Shown: positions 27,001 to 47,400 of the stretch, one piece after another
Layout: each line of letters begins with the position of its first letter
How positions within the stretch are numbered: the first letter of the stretch is position 1
Source of the DNA: Fimbriosthenelais zetlandica
Lineage: Eukaryota
Direction of reading: 5' to 3'
Assembly: GCA_977030845.1 (NCBI GenBank)
Contig: OZ365115.1
Location: forward strand, 13,826,001 to 13,890,000
Length of the DNA stretch: 64,000 bases
Position numbers and translations under genes: made by a program
The notes under the pieces: generated by a model
The model's input: only the letters and a program-made list of their open reading frames with translations
Database searches by the model: none
Told to the model about the DNA's origin: nothing

Positions 27001-28735
27001 ATGATGTTAATCACGTACGCCGCGTTCCTGGTTCTAGGAGGGCTATGTATCGTCCTACAGTACTGGGCTAAGAGGACCCGCCGGGACCCCGCCGTGGGTA
27101 ACAACCCGACCTTCCTACAGTTCCAGCAGGGCTACTTCTCAGCTTACTACACGGCTCTACTCGCCGACTGGCTCCAGGTGAGTAATAATTGAATTAAAAA
27201 TATATAATTAATGGAATAATCTTTAATAAAATATAATTATAATTAGGAAAACCCCTAAAAAGTGTTTGTAGAAACTTTCCAGCCTGATAGTTTGTCCGTG
27301 CAAGATTTATTTTCAAAATATATAATGTGAAATTGTTTAGATGAATTGATTTCTACACATGGATGCACCTTCTGTGTACAAAAAATGACTTGCTAAAGAT
27401 GGCTGACTCTCTTGAATCTCTTACTCTGATGCATTTAGGAATTGAACAGAGAAGATGAAATGTCCTCATTCTGTTCTAGGGGCCATATCTGTAAAAAGTC
27501 TCAAATAAACTGTACCAATGTAAGGGAGATAAACTAATAATGTTTTATTTCTCTTGTAGGGGCCGTATTTATATAAGCTGTATCAACACTATGGTTTCAT
27601 GGAGGATCAGATCGCCACCCTTTACGTGTGTGGGTTCGCCTCCACTGTGCTACTCGGGACCTGGGCGCCTATCGCCGCTGATAAGTTTGGTCGTAAGAAG
27701 CTGTGTATCGTGTTTACCGTCATCTACTCGCTGGCCTGCTTCTTCAAGCTATCACGGAGTTATGGCATATTAATCCTGGGCCGAGTGTTGGGGGGCGTGG
27801 CCACCAGTCTTCTCTTCTCAGCCTTCGAGGCCTGGTACCTCCACGAACATTTAGAAAACGACTTCCCTAAAGAGTGGATCCCTGTGACATTTAACAAAGC
27901 TAATGTATGGAACGGTGGGCTGGCTATACTGGCCGGTGTAGTTAGTAATATTGTATCAGAGTGGTTACAGTTCGGGCCGGTGTCGCCCTTCATGCTGGCC
28001 ATAGTGTGTTTAGTGGCCTCAGCCGTGGTTGTTCTAACTCAGTGGAAGGAGAATTACGCTAAACAGCAGATCAGGTTCACTAAGCCGTGTTTACAGGGGT
28101 TGAGGGAGATTACCAGTGAACCTCGTATATTCCTCATCGGGTCTATACAGGCTATGTTTGAGAGCGCCATGTATCTGTTTATCTTCCTCTGGACGCCTGT
28201 ACTCGACCCCGGCAAGCCGTCTCTCGGTATCGCCTTCTCTAGCTTCATGGTCTGTATTATGATCGGCTCAGCTCTCTATCAGATCCTCGCATCACGTGAT
28301 GTGCCCGTCCTACACCTCCTGTCTATATCTGTGGTCATCTCTCTCATTGGTAACATCCTCTGTGTCCTAGCGACTAACCCTGACAACATGAATAGAAACC
28401 TGGCCTTTATCTCCTTCCTGGTCATAGAGGTGGGTGTAGGCATCTACTTCCAGGCTATGGGTAAAGTAAGGAGTAAAGTATTACCAGAAGCTAACGCGTC
28501 TAGTATCATGAACTGGTTTAGAGTACCACTCAACCTCATCGCGTGTCTAACGCTCATGTCGTTACATAGTAACACCATGAGGCATGGTAACAGAATGTTG
28601 TTTGTAACGTGTGTAGGTTTGTTAGCTATCGCCACTGTTTGTTGTTTTAAGTTTATTAGCATGGTGCGTGATGATGAGACATTCCAATCTGACATGGAGG
28701 CCACAGAAGATGAAACAGCGCCAGTCGAGGCGTAA
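27001..28735 (+). CDS. MFSD5: Major facilitator superfamily protein 5 (molybdate-anion transporter family), 450 aa, 2 coding exons
   Basis: Exons 27001-27177 and 27560-28735. Motifs LLADWLQ|GPYLYKLYQHY, GGVATSLLFSAFEAWYLHEH, FIFLWTPVL and IMNWFRVPLN match MFSD5. Confidence 0.97.
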
Positions 28736-29161
28736 TAATGAACTATTAATTATATTAATTAATATTTTATACGTTACAGGGATCAACAACTAATTGTTAA
28801 TATTAATAATATATAAAATTATGTACAGCTAATGTTCTGCTATGAATATTAAAAATATTCAAGCGGCCTATATTATTTTAAGTTATATTTTGGGGCTTAA
28901 AAATAACTCATTTTTAATGTATTCGATGCGTACATTTAATCTGTCAGTTAATCTTGTTGGTGACGGTATATATACATATAAATGTATGGGCTTTAATTAA
29001 TTATTTGCAATGTACAAAGGGGCAAATAAAGAATTTCAAACAGTAATGTATTTCTTAGAGGTTTTCTATGGGCTCCAATGAGGGACGGTAAGCCAGCGCC
29101 ATCTGAATAGACGGCCGGGAGGTGAACTACAGCTCAATCTACACTCGTGTTTGCCTAGACA

Positions 29162-29367
29162 TAGCCTGACATCCAAGCCTCACGGGCTCCCCCCAGCGAC
29201 TACCGGGGAGGGACGGATGCTCTGTCTATCTAGGCCTACTCGTGTATTTTGAATCTCTTTATAAAATAAGAATATTTGTGCTACCGTAGACAGAGTATCC
29301 GTCCCTCCCCTGTAGTCGCTTGGGGTAGCTCGCTGGGGGGAGCCCGTGAGGCTTGGTTGTCAGGCTA
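29162..29367. mobile_element. Palindromic MITE (~67-81-bp inverted arms)
   Basis: tagcctgacatccaagcctcacgggctccccccagcgac...ggacggatgctctgtcta (29162-29228) is inverted at 29287-29367. The ends are TA|GCC...GGC|TA. Confidence 0.8.
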
Positions 29368-29374
29368 GTGCTAC

Positions 29375-29639
29375 TGTTATACGCTACGAATGGTGGCGAC
29401 ACTTGTGGGGATTCCCTGAACCACATACCTGGATGCCAGGATGGGAATCCCACGAGTGACGTCACCAGTAGAGAAATGCCAGACGACCGCCAAATATGAA
29501 AGAGACTAGACCACTGTTCTACAGCACTGCTACTCTTTCGTCGCCTCACACCTGCTGAATAATATCCAAGTAAGTAATACAACTTGTATCAATCCCTAAG
29601 GAGTATTTTACCTGTCCCTGGATAGAAATATTCCTTACA
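29375..29639 (+). repeat. 5' LTR
   Basis: tgttatacgc...ttccttaca, a direct repeat of 32491-32755. Confidence 0.97.
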
Positions 29640-29640
29640 C

Positions 29641-29656
29641 TGGTGCCAGGAGTGGG
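29641..29656 (+). other. Primer-binding site, tRNA-Leu-like
   Basis: TGGTGCCAGGAGTGGG lies 1 nt after the LTR. It is complementary, with one mismatch, to the 3' end CCCACTCCTG(A/G)(C/T)A-CCA of metazoan tRNA-Leu as I recall it. Confidence 0.75.
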
Positions 29657-30471
29657 GTGAGCATCTGGCTACCTTGGCTGGAGCCATACGGGCCGTTCCT
29701 CACAAGCAAACAGGGTACTCCCCCAACATGATGATGTTGGGGCGGGAGGTTTGGCAGCCAGACAACATTATCTTCGGGATGACAACAAAAGAAGAGAACA
29801 CCCCCCCTCCAGAGTATGTCCAGAGGCTCAGAGACTCCATGGAAGAGGTGCACCGCCTGGCTCGAGAAAACCTTGGAAGAACCCAGCACCTGCAGAAAAA
29901 AACCTATGACTTGACACTGCATGAATCAGAGTACACCAGGGGTGATCTAGTATACAAACGGGACACTTCCAGCAAGAAGGGGCAAAGCCCAAAGCTGAGG
30001 CCCATCTGGAAGGGACCGTACCTAGTAGAGCAAGTGCTTTCCCCAGTACTCTACAAGATCCGAGGGCAGAAGAAATCAGAGGTGATACACCATGACCGGC
30101 TGCGCATCTGCCAGGACAGGGCTGTCCCACTCTGGATGCGGCGCATGCGCCATCGCATGCTTGATTTGGACTCAACCACCCCTTGTGATGGGTCAACGGA
30201 TGGTGATGACTCTGTTGGTGATGACCTGGACGAGCTTGGTCTTCCGGCTCTCTTCAAGGAGCCCAGCCAGAGTGTTATAAGCCACCCCACCCGCACTGGC
30301 GCCAAGGCCAACACGGCCGATGCTGGGCAGGGTGACCTTGACCCTGATGTTCCTATTTCAAGTCACGAGACCACTGCTGAGTTGCCGCGCCGTTCCAGAG
30401 CAGGTCGGAAGATTAGACTGCCAGCACGGCTACGCGACTCTGTGCGCAGTCTCACTAAGCTCTTTCACTAA
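29641..30471 (+). pseudogene. Truncated gypsy integrase C-terminus (end of core plus GPY/F region)
   Basis: The open frame EWGEHLATLAGAIRAVPHKQTGYSPNMMMLGREV...LRPIWKGPYLVEQVLSPVLYKIR...VIHHDRLR matches the gypsy integrase tail. The N-terminal zinc finger and DDE core are missing. Confidence 0.88.
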
Positions 30472-30579
30472 CATGGGTGCATCTGGTAGCACCGGTTCAG
30501 TTGGCTAAGTGCATGCCTAGACTTAAGATCAGGGAAGCTGGAGAGAACTAAATCAACTTCCCTTGTAATATTTTTCAGA

Positions 30580-32235
30580 ATGTCTAACCAGCTCCCAAGG
30601 ATCAGCATCACCGTAAGGGCAAGGCCCAGTGGAGACCTGCCACCTAGCCGTACTATTACCGTGCACCAGGACCCACAGCCGGGAAATGCCCCGGACGACC
30701 ATGCCTCACTGAGGCATTCAGACCCTCACAGAGACGAGGCCCCCTCCGTACCACGGCCACCCAGCCCACGCCATCCCCCCGAAACCCTGGGCCATGACCC
30801 GGATACACAGAACAAACGCAAGCGTAAGCGAGAGGAGTCTGGGGAGGGAAATCAAACGAAGCAAAAGAATACCGATAGGGGCTATGGGTGGTGCCCGGTT
30901 ACACCTGACTGTGACCACGCTCGGGACCGGCACCTCCACCGGCATGTGGCCTGGGCCCATCTACCATTTTACATGGACCCATGGACGGCATGCTGGGGTT
31001 GCCGGACTCAGTGGGGCCGTCGGACCAGCCTTGAGACCCACCTCATGACGTGCCGGCACCCACGCACATTTGGGGAGGTTACTCTGGAAGAATGGGCTGA
31101 ACTGGCTCTCGGGATGCTGGGGGAGTTAGCCCAAAGTCTGGGGGAAGGGGTGGAGCAGTTGCCTGCCTATGCCAGGCGGAGATGCCGCATGCCCCAACAA
31201 TATGAGGTTACGGCGGAACAGGAGATCTTGATGGATCTGTTTGACCGGGCTGTCGAAGGTCATATTCCAGCCCATCGCTCCATCGTACAGCCCTCAACGT
31301 TGGGGAGCCTCCTTCATTGGCGGATCCAGGCCGCTCTAATCGCCAACTTAGACAAGAGGGACAGGAGGAGGATCCGGAGCATCCGGAAGCCGGCCCCCCT
31401 GCCACGACGTATCGTTCCCAACGGGGTCGATGCTCACTGCCACCTTCGTGATCAATGGGAGCGGCTGGGGGGTCGGGCCGCAGTGGAAGCTGCAGGCAGG
31501 CACCTCCGGGGACAGATGGAACAGCTGGAGGTAATAGATGTAGCCTGTTTCCCTCGCGACTGGAAAACAAACAGCCGTCACCTGATGCCTGGCGCCACAG
31601 TCCACAGGGCAGTGGGCATACATCCCGCAGTGGTGCCGGAAACAATTGCAGCGGCAGGACGCATTATAGATGAAGCCAAAGCCGCGACGGGCGCTGGACA
31701 TGTGATTGCTGTTGGGGAGATTGGGATCGACCTCTACCGGCAAAGCACTGAGACCCTGTTAGCACAACAGCTGGTCCTTAACTGCATGGCGTCACATGCA
31801 GTCCAGCAGGGGCTCCCCATAGTGCTTCACTGCAGGGACAGCGGTGATGGACGGGCCCAGAAGGAATGTAGAATGACGGTACGACAGGTGGTCCCCAGGG
31901 ATCACAAGATCCAGCTCCACTCATTTGATGGGGGAATGCTGGACATGTGCCAGTGGCAGGCACTGTTCACCCGGGTCTATTTCAGTTTCTCTGCCATCAT
32001 CTTACGGCCTGGCCATCACCGCGAACTGAGTGATGTGGCAAAGACTCTCCCCCTTGACCGCATCCTGCTCGAAACCGATGCCCCCCACCTGCCTCCTCCT
32101 GGAACCCGTCGTGGTGAGCACGGTCCTCCCACAATCGTGACCATCGCGGAACACCTGGGCAAACTCCGGAGACAGCCAGGAGGCCTTATTCTGGAGGCAG
32201 CGTCGAGAAATGCGAAGGCATTTTTCGACCTGTAA
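30580..32235 (+). CDS. tatD: 551-aa protein: low-complexity N-terminus, NLS, two Zn-finger-like motifs and a C-terminal TatD-family metal-dependent DNase domain
   Basis: Uninterrupted ORF. TatD motifs VDAHCHL (HxH), AVGEIGIDL (E), VLHCRD (H), QLHSFDG (H) and LLETDAP (D) are all present in the expected order and spacing. Confidence 0.92.
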   Translation: MSNQLPRISITVRARPSGDLPPSRTITVHQDPQPGNAPDDHASLRHSDPHRDEAPSVPRPPSPRHPPETLGHDPDTQNKRKRKREESGEGNQTKQKNTDRGYGWCPVTPDCDHARDRHLHRHVAWAHLPFYMDPWTACWGCRTQWGRRTSLETHLMTCRHPRTFGEVTLEEWAELALGMLGELAQSLGEGVEQLPAYARRRCRMPQQYEVTAEQEILMDLFDRAVEGHIPAHRSIVQPSTLGSLLHWRIQAALIANLDKRDRRRIRSIRKPAPLPRRIVPNGVDAHCHLRDQWERLGGRAAVEAAGRHLRGQMEQLEVIDVACFPRDWKTNSRHLMPGATVHRAVGIHPAVVPETIAAAGRIIDEAKAATGAGHVIAVGEIGIDLYRQSTETLLAQQLVLNCMASHAVQQGLPIVLHCRDSGDGRAQKECRMTVRQVVPRDHKIQLHSFDGGMLDMCQWQALFTRVYFSFSAIILRPGHHRELSDVAKTLPLDRILLETDAPHLPPPGTRRGEHGPPTIVTIAEHLGKLRRQPGGLILEAASRNAKAFFDL

Positions 32236-32470
32236 GTGCGGACCGGTAGACCAGATGTAAATAGTAACTGCCAGTCCCGAGGACGACCACTGTACATATT
32301 TATTACTTGTCCTCAGGCTGGCTAATGTACATAGGACATGTATATATACAGATATATAACAACTACTTGGCCAATGGCCGGTTACCAACGACTGACGATG
32401 ATTGTCCCCCCACCCATCCTAGTCTTGGCCCCTGGCCGGTGACCATGGTAAGGGATGTCTACCATCTCCT

Positions 32471-32490
32471 AAAAATAAAAGAGGGGAGAG
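32471..32490 (+). other. Polypurine tract
   Basis: aaaaataaaagaggggagag immediately precedes the 3' LTR. Confidence 0.9.
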
Positions 32491-32755
32491 TGTTATACGC
32501 TACGAATGGTGGCGACACTTGTGGGGATTCCCTGAACCACATACCTGGATGCCAGGATGGGAATCCCACGAGTGACGTCACCAGTAGAGAAATGCCAGAC
32601 GACCGCCAAATATGAAAGAGACTAGACCACTGTTCTACAGCACTGCTACTCTTTCGTCGCCTCACACCTGCTGAATAATATCCAAGTAAGTAATACAACT
32701 TGTATCAATCCCTAAGGAGTATTTTACCTGTCCCTGGATAGAAATATTCCTTACA
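32491..32755 (+). repeat. 3' LTR
   Basis: Direct repeat of 29375-29639. Confidence 0.97.
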
Positions 32756-32895
32756 CTACCGGTACAGTTTTGACCTGATTTGATGTTTTCATTTAAAAAA
32801 TAAAATATCAAAAAGCATGCTTAATGTCTTCTTAGTTCTGATAAATGGTAGGCTATTGGGTAAAGCGTTCGATGGATATTGATTTTGGTTCATAT

Positions 32896-32950
32896 TAGCC
32901 TGACATCCAAGCCTCACGGGACTACGGGGGAGGGACGGATACTCTGTCTA
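32896..32950 (+). mobile_element. Solo, internally shortened arm of the 29162 MITE family
   Basis: tagcctgacatccaagcctcacgggactacgggggagggacggatactctgtcta. Confidence 0.75.
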
Positions 32951-33897
32951 AGCTGATGTTCACTCGTGAGGCACAAGGTGGCAGCACCGGATATCGCATC
33001 ATTCCTTCCCTCCTCAAGAGGAGAGTTCTACATTTTGCACTAAAGTCATTTTCGTAAATCAGAATTGGAATGAATCCTTTCCTTTCAGAAAAAAACGTGT
33101 ATATTTTTATCATGATCTGGTACAAGTTTCAGGTTGATTCCATGAATGTTCGATTTTATGCAGGACTTACGTGAGGTCTAACTTCCGGTAGCCGTAGAAC
33201 TCTCCTCTCTGTGAGTGAGGAAAGTGGAGGAGTGGAGAGTCACATGATGGTCAGATATCAACATGGCGGACGCACAGGCACGCGGCTCGAGTCAAACTTA
33301 TTATACTTTTCCGACTTTAAAGCCTGTACGAAGTGAGTTACATGTGCAAAAGTTGCAAAAGTCTGAGAAGGTTACTTATACACAGTAAGTAGAACCATGT
33401 CACGGCGGTGTTCTCTCTTTCTACGTCATATAATCACTGGATCAATCATGATGTTTACATGATGTGCATGACCTACGCCGCACACTGGCAGTAGCACTGG
33501 TACTGGAGGCTGAGTCACTGACACTCATTTCATTTCAAACTTTATTTAGCGTCGGTGCGTTTACAGAAAAGTATAACATTAGCGTGAAGGTATTCAGCCG
33601 ACAAGTTAACAGGAAACAAAATGAATAACAGATGCAAAAGGCTAAAAGTAAAAGAGTCAGTGAGGGGCGGGGCTAAACAAATCTAAGAGTACCGTAAATG
33701 GCGTAATTTACTTCAGTCCTGTTTGATTCACTGACATTAGTTGTCAAAAATATCTCATATTGTGCCTTGTTAATGGACGTAAATTTATTTATTTTATATA
33801 ATTTATTTGAATATGCATGTAAAACAATCTATAGTATATTTGTTTTATATGATTTAATTTATTTTTTGAAGGAAAGTTTTGTGAACAATAGGAAATA

Positions 33898-44299: not shown

Positions 44300-44441
44300 C
44301 CACCTTGACGTCTAGACGCGGGAAACAGAGGACCACGAGAAATACAAACTGTACAGTGTAGAAAGTTACCTCCAACTCCCTGCCAAACTGATAGCAAGTT
44401 ATCATTCTGCATCTGCCTGAGAACATGGTTTGTCCATCTTC

Positions 44442-47400
44442 ATGTTTGATTCTTTGAGTCGGTCTCCTGCGTCGCCACTGAGCGGTGATAACGAGGACAT
44501 CACGATGGGCGTGTGTAACGTGTCGGTGGATCCCGGCGAGGATTCTGACGATGACATCTACACAACTCAACAAAATCCAGGAGGAATATCAGCTGAAAAG
44601 CCAAAGGTGACTGATAAATGCTGCAAAGTGATCAGCAGGAATGATCCTATCTACTTAAAATGGCAGGACGTCATTTTGACGTCTGTCATCATCTCGGCGT
44701 GTCTGGGAGTCTTCATGGTCACTCTAGATTCTACAGAGCTCACTTTGTGGGTCGTCGTTTATTTGTGTGACGCTCTCTTCGTCGTCGACATGATTCTCAT
44801 GTTTTTCACGTCGTATAAAGGTCGGGGAGGGATCCAGGTGTCTAAAAGAAACAAGATCGTGAGGAAGTATCTGAGGAAGCTGTTTATAGTGGATTTGTTG
44901 TCTGTCTTGCCCTTGGAGATCCTGGCTGTGGTTCTGGATCCAGACACACTCTGGATGACCGTCGCCTTTTTCAGGCTGAACAGACTTCTACGACTCTACA
45001 AAATCTTCACTTACTTTGGTGAGTAGAAAATTAATATTCCTAAAATATTAAATTTACTGATGACTATGTTGTGTCTGTGAGTGTGGTATTCTGTACAATT
45101 GCCATTGGATTGCTTGAGATTGACTGAGACAGACGTCTGAGTTGTACTTGTAGGCCTATTTACAAAAACAACAAATTATTAAATTTCTACATTTCTAGCA
45201 GATATAACTTATTATAAGGTTTATGTCAGTAGTGTCAAACAAGTTGCATTTTTAGGTAATTTATTTGATTAGTTTTAAGTTTATCTAGGTTCTTAATTTT
45301 AAAATATTTATTTAGACTACATTAATCATAGACATATCTATTTTGCTAATCTGTGATCATTATGAATGATAGATCTTTAATTGATCTAATACAGATCTTT
45401 ATCAATGTATATTTTTCTAATATTTATAGAGAAGCGGGAGGATGACTTGGACCAGAGCACGACTGTGACGCGCGGGTTGAAGTACTTCGTCTTGAGTTTA
45501 TTGACGACGCACGTCATGACGTGTGGATGGTACGCCATCGCTTGTGACGGACATCATGACGGTGTTAACATCACGTGTCAGCACCAGAGCTGGGCTACCA
45601 CATTTGACTTGGGTAAATATGTCTGATTTTTAGCATTGAAAATTTCTATATTGTAACATAGATCTATATTAAATATTTAAATCAAATTCAATTTTACTAT
45701 CCAAGGTCTCTACTGTGAAAAGCCAGTAGCAATGAAAACTTTTCATATACTACTACCCCATTTGACTTGGGTAAATATGTCTGATTTTTAGCATTGAAAA
45801 TTTCTATATTGTAACATAGATCTATATTAAATATTTAAATCAAATTCAATTTTACTATCCAAGGTCTCTACTGTGAAAAGCCAGTAGCAATGAAAACTTT
45901 TCATATACTACTACCCCAAAATTGAAATGTGGCGCCTTAAACTTATCCCCATTTTCCTATACTACTCAGTACTAGTCTGGATAGTTAATATGACTTTTCT
46001 TGTTTTTCACAACAAAAAAACAAATATAATAATTCACTGTGTCTGTGGGTTGTAAATGCATTTGTTTTGTCAGGATTTGATATGAGTCAAGCAGAAAGTT
46101 CCCGAGCCTACACAACATGTCTATACTGGGCCGTGGCTACAGCCACTTCTACAGGGTAATTACAGATCTCTATTACAGTCAAACTTAATTAATTTTGACG
46201 TGCAAGGGTTTGGTCCTAAGGGCCCAGATTAAAGACTAAACTCCTTTCTTGAGTACTACTTTACCACTGGTTTTAGGAAAAATAAATAAATTTCCTTAAA
46301 TATTTAATATATTTGATTCCCTGTGTTTGCTCCGCCAGCTATGGAGACATCTACGCCACCACTATACGTGAGAAGTGGTATGCTATATTCGGTATGTTGT
46401 CCGGTATCGGGGTGTTTTTCGGTATGCTGCTGGGTGGTATGACGTCCATGTTGACTAATTTAGACGCACATCGGTCTTCCTACGTCCACCGCTTCCAAAG
46501 TATTAAACGGAACCTCGTAAGTTCTCCTTATATCATTGATATAATATATAGCAATTAATGAATTATATTTTAAGTTTAATTCTTTTGATATTTGCGACCA
46601 TGGATCAGGCTTTAGGGTGTTGGATTCTAATGCAGGAGGTCCCAGGTCCAATATAAATGACAGATATCAATTATAGTTTGTATTTTAATATTCAGAGAGA
46701 GCAGTCAGTGAAGAAGGAACTGACAGACATGGTCGTGTCCTTTTATGAGTATTTGTGGAAGGAGAAGAAAGGTGTCCTGTCACACGGCGTGTACGACCAG
46801 CTACCCATCGTCTTCCAGGCCGAGATAGCACAGGCCACCAACAGTGAGACCATTCAGAAGGTAAACGTGTTGTGCCTCTCATTATTATATCATTGTCTAT
46901 ATAATATATTGTCACTGTGCCTCTCTTAAATTTATGTCTGTTATATGTTGTACCTCATTATGTCTGTATAATGTGTTGTGCCTCTCATTATGTGTATAAT
47001 ATGTTGTGCCTTTATTATGTGTGAATAATTTGTTGTGCCTCTTATGTGTGTATAATATGTTGTGTCTCATTATGTCTGTATATCTTGTGCCTCTCATGTC
47101 TATAATATGTCATGCCTCTCTTCCAGGCACCCATCTTCTCTGACACTGACCCTGGTTTAATCCGCATGTTGTCCCTCTCATTTAAACACGTTCTCTGTCT
47201 ACCCAACCAAATCATCATCAAGCGAGGCGACATCGGTACACAGATGTTCTTCATTCACTCTGGAGAGGTCGAGGTGGGTGTGAGGTTCAAATTATAAATA
47301 CACAACCCAGCGCTGCTAACTGGGATATCAAGTGCCAACCATGTCTCCCACTGTCTTTGGTGAGATGCATGTTAAAGGCCAGCTATGTCTCCCACTGTCT

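What the first reader, a model, noticed from the sequence alone, without database searches (positions are those of the whole stretch)
29375..32755. Young gypsy-derived LTR element whose only intact cargo is a TatD nuclease
Seen: identical-looking 265-bp LTRs, a CTAC TSD, PBS, PPT, an integrase tail only, and an intact 551-aa ORF with every TatD metal ligand (HxH, E, H, H, D). Established: TatD proteins are amidohydrolase-fold DNases with 3'-5' exonuclease and AP-endonuclease activity; they are cellular housekeeping enzymes and are not a standard LTR-retrotransposon domain. Inference: this is a retroelement lineage that captured a TatD nuclease as an accessory gene. It may trim or repair cDNA or integration intermediates, or antagonise host DNA defences. 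The non-autonomous copy shed gag/pol yet kept this ORF. I do not know of a description of such a system, but I cannot exclude that one exists.
Basis: partly seen in the sequence, partly recalled or inferred. Interest (0 to 1): 0.92.

Follow-up and report, generated by a model that had tools for sequence, protein, structure and literature searches.

The report
Retrotransposon lineage carrying a TatD nuclease gene
This is a very recently inserted, internally deleted copy of a Ty3/gypsy retrotransposon lineage whose intact members all carry, after gag and pol, an extra gene for a zinc-finger-tagged nuclease related to the animal RNA/DNA-hybrid nuclease TATDN2, an accessory gene I could not find described in the literature.

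Summary
There are two 265-bp LTRs that are 100% identical (29375-29639, 32491-32755), a CTAC target-site duplication, a primer-binding site, a polypurine tract, an integrase C-terminal tail only, and an intact 551-aa ORF. That ORF has a TatD domain (Pfam E 2.7e-36) and keeps every universally conserved TatD residue.

In 10 of 11 related loci with enough upstream sequence, a homologous ORF lies shortly (about 80-660 nt) downstream of a PR-RT-RNaseH-IN pol. Several of these loci also show gag, LTRs and a target-site duplication.

The protein is a fixed three-part module: two C2H2 zinc fingers, a helical linker and TatD. At least 128 sequences out of 164 examined have it. Its TatD domains form one clade, sister to metazoan TATDN2, which lacks the zinc-finger module. 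Catalytic residues are invariant, and pooled pN/pS between close copies is 0.11.

Splice-donor, branch-point and acceptor motifs suggest expression from an env-like spliced mRNA. This is inferred, not shown.

The window copy lost everything from just after the primer-binding site to about integrase residue 237. That it kept the TatD ORF is not evidence of selection.

What the nuclease does is untested. Full-text searches found no description of it. I rate it a new variant of a known kind.

The parts
29371..29374 (+). Left copy of the 4-bp target-site duplication (CTAC)
   Evidence: Read directly from the sequence. It is identical to 32756-32759.
29375..29639 (+). 5' LTR, 265 bp, TG...CA
   Evidence: 100% identical to the 3' LTR.
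29570..29575 (+). Candidate 5' splice donor CAA|GTAAGT inside the LTR, also present in the 3' LTR at 32686-32691
   Evidence: The same CAA|GTAAGT lies 30-70 nt before the LTR end in L001 and L002, although the LTRs are otherwise dissimilar. That it acts as a donor is inferred, not shown.
29641..29652 (+). Primer-binding site (TGGTGCCAGG...), one base after the LTR
   Evidence: The same 10-mer sits at the same position in L001, and TGGTGCCA in L002. The cognate tRNA was not identified; no tRNA genes are in the window or the loci.
29647..29653 (+). Internal deletion junction: the primer-binding site joins directly to about integrase residue 237
   Evidence: tblastn and translation against the L001 integrase. 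About 7 kb of leader, gag, PR, RT, RNase H and integrase core is missing relative to L001.
29647..30471 (+). Integrase C-terminal tail, running to the natural pol stop; no zinc-binding or catalytic core
   Evidence: 41% identity to L001 integrase residues 237-577. Pfam Integrase_p58_C E 5.6e-9.
30558..30578 (+). Polypyrimidine tract plus AG, a candidate 3' splice acceptor ending one base before the ATG
   Evidence: Among the top 1.7% of all AG sites in the element by pyrimidine content. The signal recurs in relatives (Fisher p 0.003). A CTAAC branch-point-like motif lies upstream of the ORF in 7 of 11 loci (p 1e-6). Inferred.
30580..32235 (+). Intact 551-aa ORF3: disordered N-terminus, two C2H2 zinc fingers, helical linker, TatD nuclease
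30892..31050 (+). Tandem C2H2-type zinc fingers (residues about 105-157)
   Evidence: C105, C111, H122, H127, C138 and C141 are invariant in 30 relatives. The profile matches tandem C2H2 fingers of CTCF and ZBTB17 (E 2e-4).
31057..31389 (+). Conserved helical linker (LLHWR motif), specific to the element-borne family
   Evidence: pLDDT is mostly above 90 in the model. The zinc-finger-plus-linker profile hits 128 of 164 element-type proteins and none of 121 TATDN2 orthologues.
31426..32226 (+). TatD TIM-barrel nuclease domain (residues 283-549)
   Evidence: Pfam PF01026 E 2.7e-36. Foldseek TM 0.82-0.85 to YcfH/TatD structures. All universally conserved residues are present.
32471..32490 (+). 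Polypurine tract abutting the 3' LTR
   Evidence: Read directly from the sequence.
32491..32755 (+). 3' LTR, 265 bp
32756..32759 (+). Right copy of the target-site duplication (CTAC)
   Evidence: Read directly from the sequence.

Best explanation
The region is a very young insertion of an internally deleted, non-autonomous copy of a Ty3/gypsy-type LTR retrotransposon. The canonical layout of this lineage is LTR, gag, pol (PR-RT-RNaseH-IN), ORF3, LTR. ORF3 encodes a nuclease specific to the lineage. It consists of a disordered N-terminus, two C2H2 zinc fingers, a helical linker and a TatD TIM-barrel domain, and the closest cellular relative of that domain is metazoan TATDN2.

Shown:
- the anatomy of the window copy;
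- the full-length partners in other genomes;
- the conserved architecture;
- invariant catalytic residues and purifying selection;
- the sister relation to TATDN2.

Inferred:
1. ORF3 is expressed like a retroviral env gene, from a subgenomic mRNA spliced from a donor in the LTR or leader to an acceptor just before the ATG.
2. The zinc fingers bring the nuclease to nucleic acid. By analogy with TATDN2, which degrades the RNA strand of R-loops, the nuclease most likely acts on RNA:DNA hybrids or free 3' ends among the element's own replication and integration intermediates. It would act alongside the element's RNase H, which is still present.
3. The window copy arose by a single deletion from just after the primer-binding site to about integrase residue 237, probably a template switch during reverse transcription or a microhomology deletion. 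It can move only with gag and pol supplied in trans, but it could still express the nuclease.
For: Anatomy of the window copy.

Full-length partners: L001 has LTRs with a CTTA duplication and the same primer-binding site, then gag, PR-RT-RNaseH, IN and TatD. L002 has 98.7%-identical LTRs. pol followed by TatD also occurs in L004, L005, L006, L007, L009, L010, L012 and L014. In all, 10 of 11 loci with at least 2.5 kb upstream are positive.

Family size and architecture: 7645 TatD hits, and 128 of the 164 retrieved proteins carry the zinc-finger-plus-linker module.

TatD identity: Pfam, solved structures, AlphaFold2 and Foldseek. Fourteen residues are invariant across 71 element-borne, TATDN2 and bacterial domains.

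Origin: the element-type sequences form one clade (SH-aLRT 98), sister to a TATDN2 clade (98), and the two together are separated from bacterial TatD (100).

Selection: 11 synonymous against 4 nonsynonymous differences, pooled pN/pS 0.11, p 7e-5.

Co-inheritance: the L001/L002 and L007/L009 pairs are recovered in both the pol and TatD trees.

Splicing signals.

TATDN2 biochemistry: PMC10711561.
Against: - Only one copy is in the window, and the source genome could not be searched. Copy number and any full-length partner in the same genome are therefore unknown.
- No RNA data support the splice model. The acceptor signal is weak in some loci (L001, L009, L003).
- The nuclease substrate is inferred only from the sister family. 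TatD enzymes differ in whether they prefer DNA or RNA.
- RNase H is retained in pol, so no obvious gap needs filling.
- One family member (L013, fused to NADAR) has no pol within 4.4 kb upstream. The module is therefore not strictly confined to gypsy elements.
- The selection estimate rests on 15 substitutions.
- The tree lacked TATDN1, TATDN3 and non-metazoan eukaryotic TatD sequences.
Confidence: 0.8

Rival explanations
1. ORF3 is a counter-defence factor rather than a replication factor. It would destroy immunostimulatory by-products such as cytosolic cDNA or hybrids. Alternatively it would destroy host defence nucleic acids such as hairpin or double-stranded small-RNA precursors, protecting the element from innate sensing or silencing.
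For: TATDN2 cleaves double-stranded hairpin RNA as well as R-loop RNA (PMC10711561). Related elements combine the module with domains that handle ADP-ribose: NADAR fused to ZnF-TatD in P0118 and P0153, and a Macro domain inside gag in L011. Viral macrodomains are known counter-defence devices; this last point is from my own knowledge. TatD evolves faster than pol (27% against 47% identity), as expected for a protein at a conflict interface.
Against: There is no direct evidence. The catalytic core is invariant, and the fast evolution lies mainly outside it. The NADAR and Macro associations are in distant members, not in the window's subgroup.
Confidence: 0.3
2. The deleted copy belongs to an established non-autonomous family that has spread in trans and was selected to keep the TatD ORF.
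For: Identical LTRs and a clean duplication show that the deleted form, or its parent, integrated very recently. The primer-binding site, polypurine tract, candidate donor, candidate acceptor and ORF3 are all retained.
Against: A single deletion event explains the structure equally well. No second copy is available. L012, in another genome, is a different deletion derivative that lost only gag, which suggests ordinary random decay. The deletion probably removed the leader and any packaging signals.
Confidence: 0.2
3. This is a one-off transduction: this single copy picked up a host TatD gene, and TatD is not a feature of the lineage.
For: Only one copy is visible in the window.
Against: Ten independent loci from at least eight families, at 25-55% protein identity, have the same ORF in the same position after pol. 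The element-type TatD forms a single clade with a unique zinc-finger module.
Confidence: 0.02
4. ORF3 is a decaying passenger with no function for the element.
For: Its sequence diverges faster than pol.
Against: Intact ORFs of about 430-1100 aa occur in more than 100 clusters. Zinc ligands and all catalytic residues are invariant. pN/pS is 0.11. The AlphaFold2 model is confident.
Confidence: 0.03

Closest known systems
Bdelloid rotifer LTR retrotransposons with enzymatic ORF3 (DEDDy 3'-5' exonuclease, GDSL esterase; also a dUTPase domain); Rodriguez, Kenefick and Arkhipova 2017, PMC5408684
   Same: They are retrovirus-like LTR elements that carry, after gag and pol, an acquired non-envelope ORF3. 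One type is a nuclease acting on RNA or ssDNA 3' ends. The concept is the same: a modular accessory enzyme in the env position.
   Different: The fold and family differ (TatD TIM-barrel metallo-nuclease against DEDDy). Here the nuclease is fused to a lineage-specific C2H2 zinc-finger and linker module. The lineage is widespread in marine and other metagenome-derived eukaryotic contigs rather than rotifer-specific. 'TatD' does not occur in that paper: it was not among the papers found by the TatD plus LTR-retrotransposon search.
Cellular TATDN2 (3'-5' RNA nuclease, R-loop resolution), PMC10711561
   Same: It is the closest cellular TatD clade (sister group). The P0149 orthologue scores 90 bits, against at most 54 bits for YjjV, YcfH, TATDN3 and TATDN1. 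All catalytic residues are shared.
   Different: The element proteins fall outside the metazoan TATDN2 clade, have about threefold longer branches, and carry zinc fingers and a linker that TATDN2 lacks (0 of 121). They sit inside LTR elements as intronless ORFs.
Errantivirus / gypsy env ORF3 expressed from a spliced subgenomic RNA (PMC3383448, PMC13524379; the splicing itself is from my own knowledge)
   Same: It is a third ORF downstream of pol in Ty3/gypsy elements. Donor and acceptor motifs are placed as they would be for an env-type spliced mRNA.
   Different: The product is a soluble nuclease, not a membrane fusion glycoprotein. Nothing suggests infectivity. Splicing is inferred only from sequence motifs.
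Internally deleted, non-autonomous LTR elements (LARD-like or defective proviruses)
   Same: LTRs, primer-binding site and polypurine tract are retained, and gag and pol are lost.
   Different: It retains one intact lineage-specific coding gene. Whether it forms a propagating family is unknown.

Membership tests
Ty3/gypsy (Metaviridae) LTR retrotransposon | Direct LTRs ending TG...CA, flanked by a short target-site duplication | tested here: met
   265-bp identical LTRs and a CTAC duplication.
Ty3/gypsy (Metaviridae) LTR retrotransposon | Primer-binding site next to the 5' LTR and polypurine tract next to the 3' LTR | tested here: met
   TGGTGCCAGG one base after the LTR, shared with L001; purine run 32471-32490. 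The cognate tRNA was not identified.
Ty3/gypsy (Metaviridae) LTR retrotransposon | pol with the order PR-RT-RNaseH-IN and a gypsy-type gag | tested here: not met
   In the window copy these are deleted; only the integrase tail remains. They are present in the relatives L001, L004, L005, L007 and L009, with Pfam gag-asp_proteas, RVT_1, RT_RNaseH, Integrase_H2C2, rve, and PEG10_N-capsid/zf-CCHC in gag. The copy is therefore a deletion derivative of the family, not an autonomous member.
Ty3/gypsy (Metaviridae) LTR retrotransposon | Placement in a named gypsy clade by RT/IN phylogeny against reference sets (GyDB) | not testable with these tools
   No reference clade sequences were on hand.
TatD nuclease family (PF01026) | Profile match above the curated threshold over the whole domain | tested here: met
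   125.7 bits against a cut-off of 27; profile positions 1-252 of 253.
TatD nuclease family (PF01026) | Metal-ligand and catalytic residues (HxH, E, H, H, E/D) | tested here: met
   H286, H288, E380, H417, H447, E498 and D500 are invariant in 71 diverse TatD domains.
TatD nuclease family (PF01026) | TIM-barrel amidohydrolase-type fold | tested here: met
   AlphaFold2 pLDDT 84; Foldseek top hits are all TatD/YcfH/TATDN structures, TM 0.71-0.85 normalised to the target.
TatD nuclease family (PF01026) | Metal-dependent nuclease activity | not testable with these tools
   Needs a biochemical assay.
Cellular TATDN2 orthologue | Falls inside the metazoan TATDN2 clade | tested here: not met
   The element-type sequences form a separate clade, sister to TATDN2 (SH-aLRT 98 for each).
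Cellular TATDN2 orthologue | The N-terminal architecture is shared with TATDN2 | tested here: not met
   The zinc-finger-plus-linker profile hits 0 of 121 TATDN2 orthologues (best E 1.3) against 128 of 164 element-type proteins.
Env-like spliced ORF3 | Splice donor in the LTR or leader and an acceptor just upstream of ORF3 | tested here: inconclusive
   CAA|GTAAGT is conserved in the LTRs of the window, L001 and L002. A polypyrimidine-AG lies near the ATG (Fisher p 0.003). CTAAC is enriched upstream (p 1e-6). There are no RNA data.
Propagating non-autonomous LTR family | Several copies share the same internal deletion junction | not testable with these tools
   The source genome is not searchable here, and the window holds one copy only.

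The most novel reading that the evidence does not exclude
An ancient and widespread Ty3/gypsy lineage depends on a second, element-encoded nuclease: a zinc-finger-targeted, TATDN2-like enzyme made from a spliced mRNA. This enzyme would process RNA:DNA hybrids or 3' ends in replication intermediates, or would disarm host nucleic-acid-based defence. If so, the env position of LTR retroelements is a general slot for nucleic-acid-processing accessory enzymes. Because the element clade and TATDN2 are sister groups, the direction of transfer is also still open: capture by the element, or domestication into the host.
Probability: 0.3. Interest if true: 0.8.

Novelty: new variant of a known kind. Interest (0 to 1): 0.62.

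Why it matters
LTR retroelements are usually described as gag and pol, with or without env. Accessory enzymatic ORF3s have so far been documented mainly in bdelloid rotifers.

Here a single conserved nuclease module recurs in more than a hundred divergent element families, under purifying selection and with intact catalytic residues. It is related to TATDN2, the host enzyme that removes RNA from R-loops. This makes an open question testable: which nucleic-acid processing steps of retrotransposition, or of escape from host sensing, are not covered by RT, RNase H and integrase?

There is also a practical annotation point. 'TATDN2-like' gene models in invertebrate genomes may be retrotransposon ORFs, as possibly in the giant-squid Hox cluster (PMC6962438).

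Tried and rejected
- The word-indexed protein search with the ORF alone found only 7 relatives. Repeating it with alignment A1 was swamped by bacterial TatD and added no names.
- The search for related loci with the zinc-finger alignment A2 failed because no stretch was conserved enough. A tighter alignment, A3, gave only 2 loci in JGI metagenomes.
- Looking up the assembly accessions JAAUYI and GCA_013332675 in papers gave nothing, so the hosts of the related elements remain unknown.
- No tRNA genes were found in the window or the loci to identify the primer tRNA. The resemblance to tRNA-Leu is from memory only and is not claimed.
- Rfam found nothing in the window.
- Comparing pol and TatD distances gave only weak support for co-phylogeny beyond two sister pairs (Mantel p 0.045, Spearman not significant).
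- L003 and L015 have too little upstream sequence to test for pol.
- Rejected readings: a one-off transduction, a host gene flanked by LTRs by chance, and a decaying passenger ORF (see the rival explanations).
Full report
1. THE OBSERVATION

Reading 29000-33200 and the repeat search show two direct repeats at 29375 and 32491 that are 100% identical. Trimmed to TG...CA, they are 265-bp LTRs (29375-29639 and 32491-32755). A 41-nt LTR probe matches only these two places in the window, with 0 matches expected by chance.

- CTAC flanks both ends (29371-29374 and 32756-32759).
- One base after the 5' LTR comes TGGTGCCAGG, a primer-binding-site-like sequence.
- A purine run at 32471-32490 abuts the 3' LTR.

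Between the LTRs there are only two sense ORFs of note.

- The first (29674-30471 as listed; homology starts at 29647) hits Pfam Integrase_p58_C. It aligns with residues 237-577 of a 577-aa integrase found later.
- The second (30580-32235, 551 aa) hits Pfam TatD_DNase over the whole profile (E 2.7e-36).

tblastn with gag, pol, IN and TatD from a full-length relative finds nothing else in the 64 kb.

2. FULL-LENGTH PARTNERS EXIST

The nearest protein in the databases, P0001 (40% identity over 86% of the ORF), lies on a 251-kb contig. There it is the fourth ORF of a complete element (L001). That element has:
- 184-bp identical LTRs running TG...CA;
- a CTTA target-site duplication;
- the same TGGTGCCAGG one base after the LTR;
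- gag (PEG10_N-capsid, zf-CCHC), then PR-RT-RNaseH, then IN, then the TatD ORF 94 nt after the IN stop;
- then the 3' LTR.

I sampled the genomic context of further family members.

- The ORF follows a PR-RT-RNaseH-IN pol by about 80-240 nt in L002, L004, L005, L006, L007, L009, L010 and L012. In L014 the TatD homology begins about 660 nt after the end of the pol homology.
- L008 and L011 show TatD followed by gag and pol. These are tandem or collapsed assemblies. In L008 and L009 the contig ends overlap by 139-141 nt.
- L003 and L015 have too little upstream sequence to judge.
- L013 is the one clear exception: there is no pol in 4.4 kb upstream.

In total, 10 of 11 testable loci, from at least eight families sharing only 24-55% ORF3 identity, have the same layout. 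This refutes a one-off transduction.

3. WHAT THE ORF ENCODES

An exhaustive phmmer search of 1.84 billion representative proteins gave 7645 hits, 30 of them at E <= 1e-30. Most of the best 150 align from about residue 100 to residue 550.

A 30-sequence alignment (A1) shows a fixed architecture.

- A variable, disordered N-terminus.
- A two-finger motif of the form CPxC...RRHv...HLPW[YF]..P..ACWxC...H. C105, C111, H122, H127, C138 and C141 are invariant.
- A helical linker with an LLHWR motif.
- The TatD domain. D284, H286, H288, H348, E380, H417, H447, E498 and D500 are invariant.

The profile of the N-terminal part matches tandem C2H2 fingers of CTCF and ZBTB17 (E 2e-4). It matches no Pfam family convincingly.

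AlphaFold2 with A1 gives pLDDT 84. Residues 100-551 are ordered and 1-96 are disordered. Foldseek returns only TatD-type structures at the top, with TM 0.82-0.85 to YcfH-type DNases.

Across 71 element-borne, TATDN2 and bacterial domains, 14 positions are invariant, including all metal ligands. The window ORF has every one of them.

4. ORIGIN OF THE CARGO

P0149, a 773-aa snail protein, is an orthologue of TATDN2. Its relatives are named TATDN2 in molluscs, spiders, fishes, reptiles and mammals. It scores 90 bits against the window ORF. YjjV scores 54, YcfH 47, TATDN3 36 and TATDN1 23.

I built a maximum-likelihood tree of 35 element-type, 21 TATDN2 and 15 bacterial domains.
- The element-type sequences form one clade (SH-aLRT 98).
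- TATDN2 forms one clade (98).
- The two together are separated from bacteria (100).
- Element branches are about three times longer.

The zinc-finger-plus-linker profile hits 128 of 164 element-type proteins and none of 121 TATDN2 orthologues. The cargo is thus a TATDN2-like domain joined to a module unique to the elements. It was acquired once and long ago. The direction of transfer cannot be fixed from a sister relation, and TATDN1, TATDN3 and non-metazoan sequences were not in the tree.

5. SELECTION AND CO-INHERITANCE

Close copies differ mostly at synonymous sites.
- L001 against L012: 7 synonymous and 4 nonsynonymous differences.
- L009 against L010: 4 synonymous and 0 nonsynonymous.
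- Pooled pN/pS is 0.11, with binomial p 7e-5.

Among seven lineages, pol is about 47% identical and ORF3 about 27%. The two closest pairs (L001/L002 and L007/L009) are recovered in both trees. Deeper congruence is unresolved.

6. HOW IT IS PROBABLY EXPRESSED (INFERRED)

In the window, the ATG is preceded by a pyrimidine-rich tract ending in cag, one base upstream. L002, L005, L006 and L011 have equally good polypyrimidine-AG sites at the start codon. In L001 the same cag|AATGTC follows a first ATG.

- Scored against all AG sites in each locus, the enrichment gives Fisher p 0.003.
- A CTAAC branch-point-like motif lies within 110 nt upstream in 7 of 11 loci, against 6% expected (p 1e-6).
- The LTRs of the window, L001 and L002 are otherwise unalignable. 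They share CAA|GTAAGT 30-70 nt before the LTR end. More distant elements have GTAAGT in the leader.

This is the arrangement of an env-type subgenomic mRNA. The deleted window copy keeps the candidate donor, the candidate acceptor and the ORF.

7. THE DELETION

Integrase homology begins at 29647, inside or immediately after the primer-binding site. One event therefore removed the leader, gag, PR, RT, RNase H and the integrase core, about 7 kb in L001 terms.

Identical LTRs and a clean duplication fit either of two origins:
- a template switch during the reverse transcription that made this copy;
- a deletion soon after insertion.

L012 is an independent derivative in another genome, in which a partial LTR joins to PR and only gag is lost. 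Nothing shows that retention of ORF3 was selected.

8. LIKELY FUNCTION

Human TATDN2 is a Mg2+-dependent RNA 3' exonuclease and endonuclease. It degrades the RNA strand of R-loops, and two glutamates are essential for this (PMC10711561). By motif, the equivalent glutamates are invariant here: E380 in GExG and E498 in ExD.

My preferred reading is that the zinc fingers deliver the nuclease to the element's own RNA:DNA or 3'-end intermediates.

The main rival is counter-defence. It gains some support from NADAR fusions (P0118, P0153) and from a Macro domain in the gag of L011. Both domains handle ADP-ribose. Neither reading is tested.

9. COMPARISON AND NOVELTY

The closest precedent is the enzymatic ORF3s of bdelloid LTR elements, which include a DEDDy exonuclease and a GDSL esterase (PMC5408684).

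Six full-text searches combining TatD or TATDN2 with LTR, retrotransposon, gypsy, Ty3, Metaviridae or transposable found no paper linking them. Repbase and Dfam could not be searched.

The giant-squid genome paper lists a 'TATDN2' among transposon-like genes inside the Hox cluster (PMC6962438). That may be this family.

I rate the finding a new variant of a known kind, with interest 0.62.

Noticed in passing
window 29162-29367 (also 32896-32950): A 206-bp near-perfect palindrome resembling a MITE ends 7 bp before the LTR insertion site. It folds at -81.6 kcal/mol (z -16). A third copy of its 25-nt terminus, plus a 31-nt inner segment, lies about 140 bp downstream of the element. The LTR element therefore landed between copies of another repeat.
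   Followed up: partly
window 27599-28735 (+): A 378-aa ORF is an exon of an MFS_5 (MFSD5 / molybdate-anion-transporter-like) gene (Pfam E 2.9e-64, profile positions 69-331). The LTR element sits about 640 bp downstream of its stop codon.
   Followed up: partly
window 44430-45026 (+): An ORF fragment with an Ion_trans domain (E 1.2e-8), probably an exon of an ion-channel gene.
   Followed up: no
window 29457-29464 (and 32573-32580): A perfect palindromic TGACGTCA (CRE/ATF-type site) lies in the LTR upstream of an AT-rich TATA-like stretch. It may be part of the LTR promoter.
   Followed up: no
L011 5880-9509: In a related element the gag-like ORF (1210 aa, zf-CCHC at its end) contains a Macro domain (E 8.6e-26). 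The element therefore carries both Macro and ZnF-TatD accessory domains.
   Followed up: partly
L013 4473-7826; proteins P0118, P0153: These are fusions of NADAR with the zinc-finger and TatD module. In L013 there is no pol within 4.4 kb upstream, and a histone-fold gene lies nearby. This may be a domesticated copy or one carried by another type of element.
   Followed up: partly
L012 5337-12265: A second kind of deletion derivative of the L001 family: a partial LTR (131 of 184 bp) is joined directly to the protease region. gag is lost, while pol and TatD are intact.
   Followed up: partly
proteins P0378, P0387, P0298: These TATDN2-clade-like proteins carry zf-CCHC knuckles (P0378 has 47 member sequences), or an RVT_1 domain in one gene model. 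They hint at further links between TatD and retroelements outside the zinc-finger family.
   Followed up: no
L008 and L009 contig ends: The contig ends overlap by 139-141 nt. The assemblers collapsed these repeats into circular-looking paths, so the order TatD-LTR-gag there is an assembly artefact or a tandem array.
   Followed up: partly
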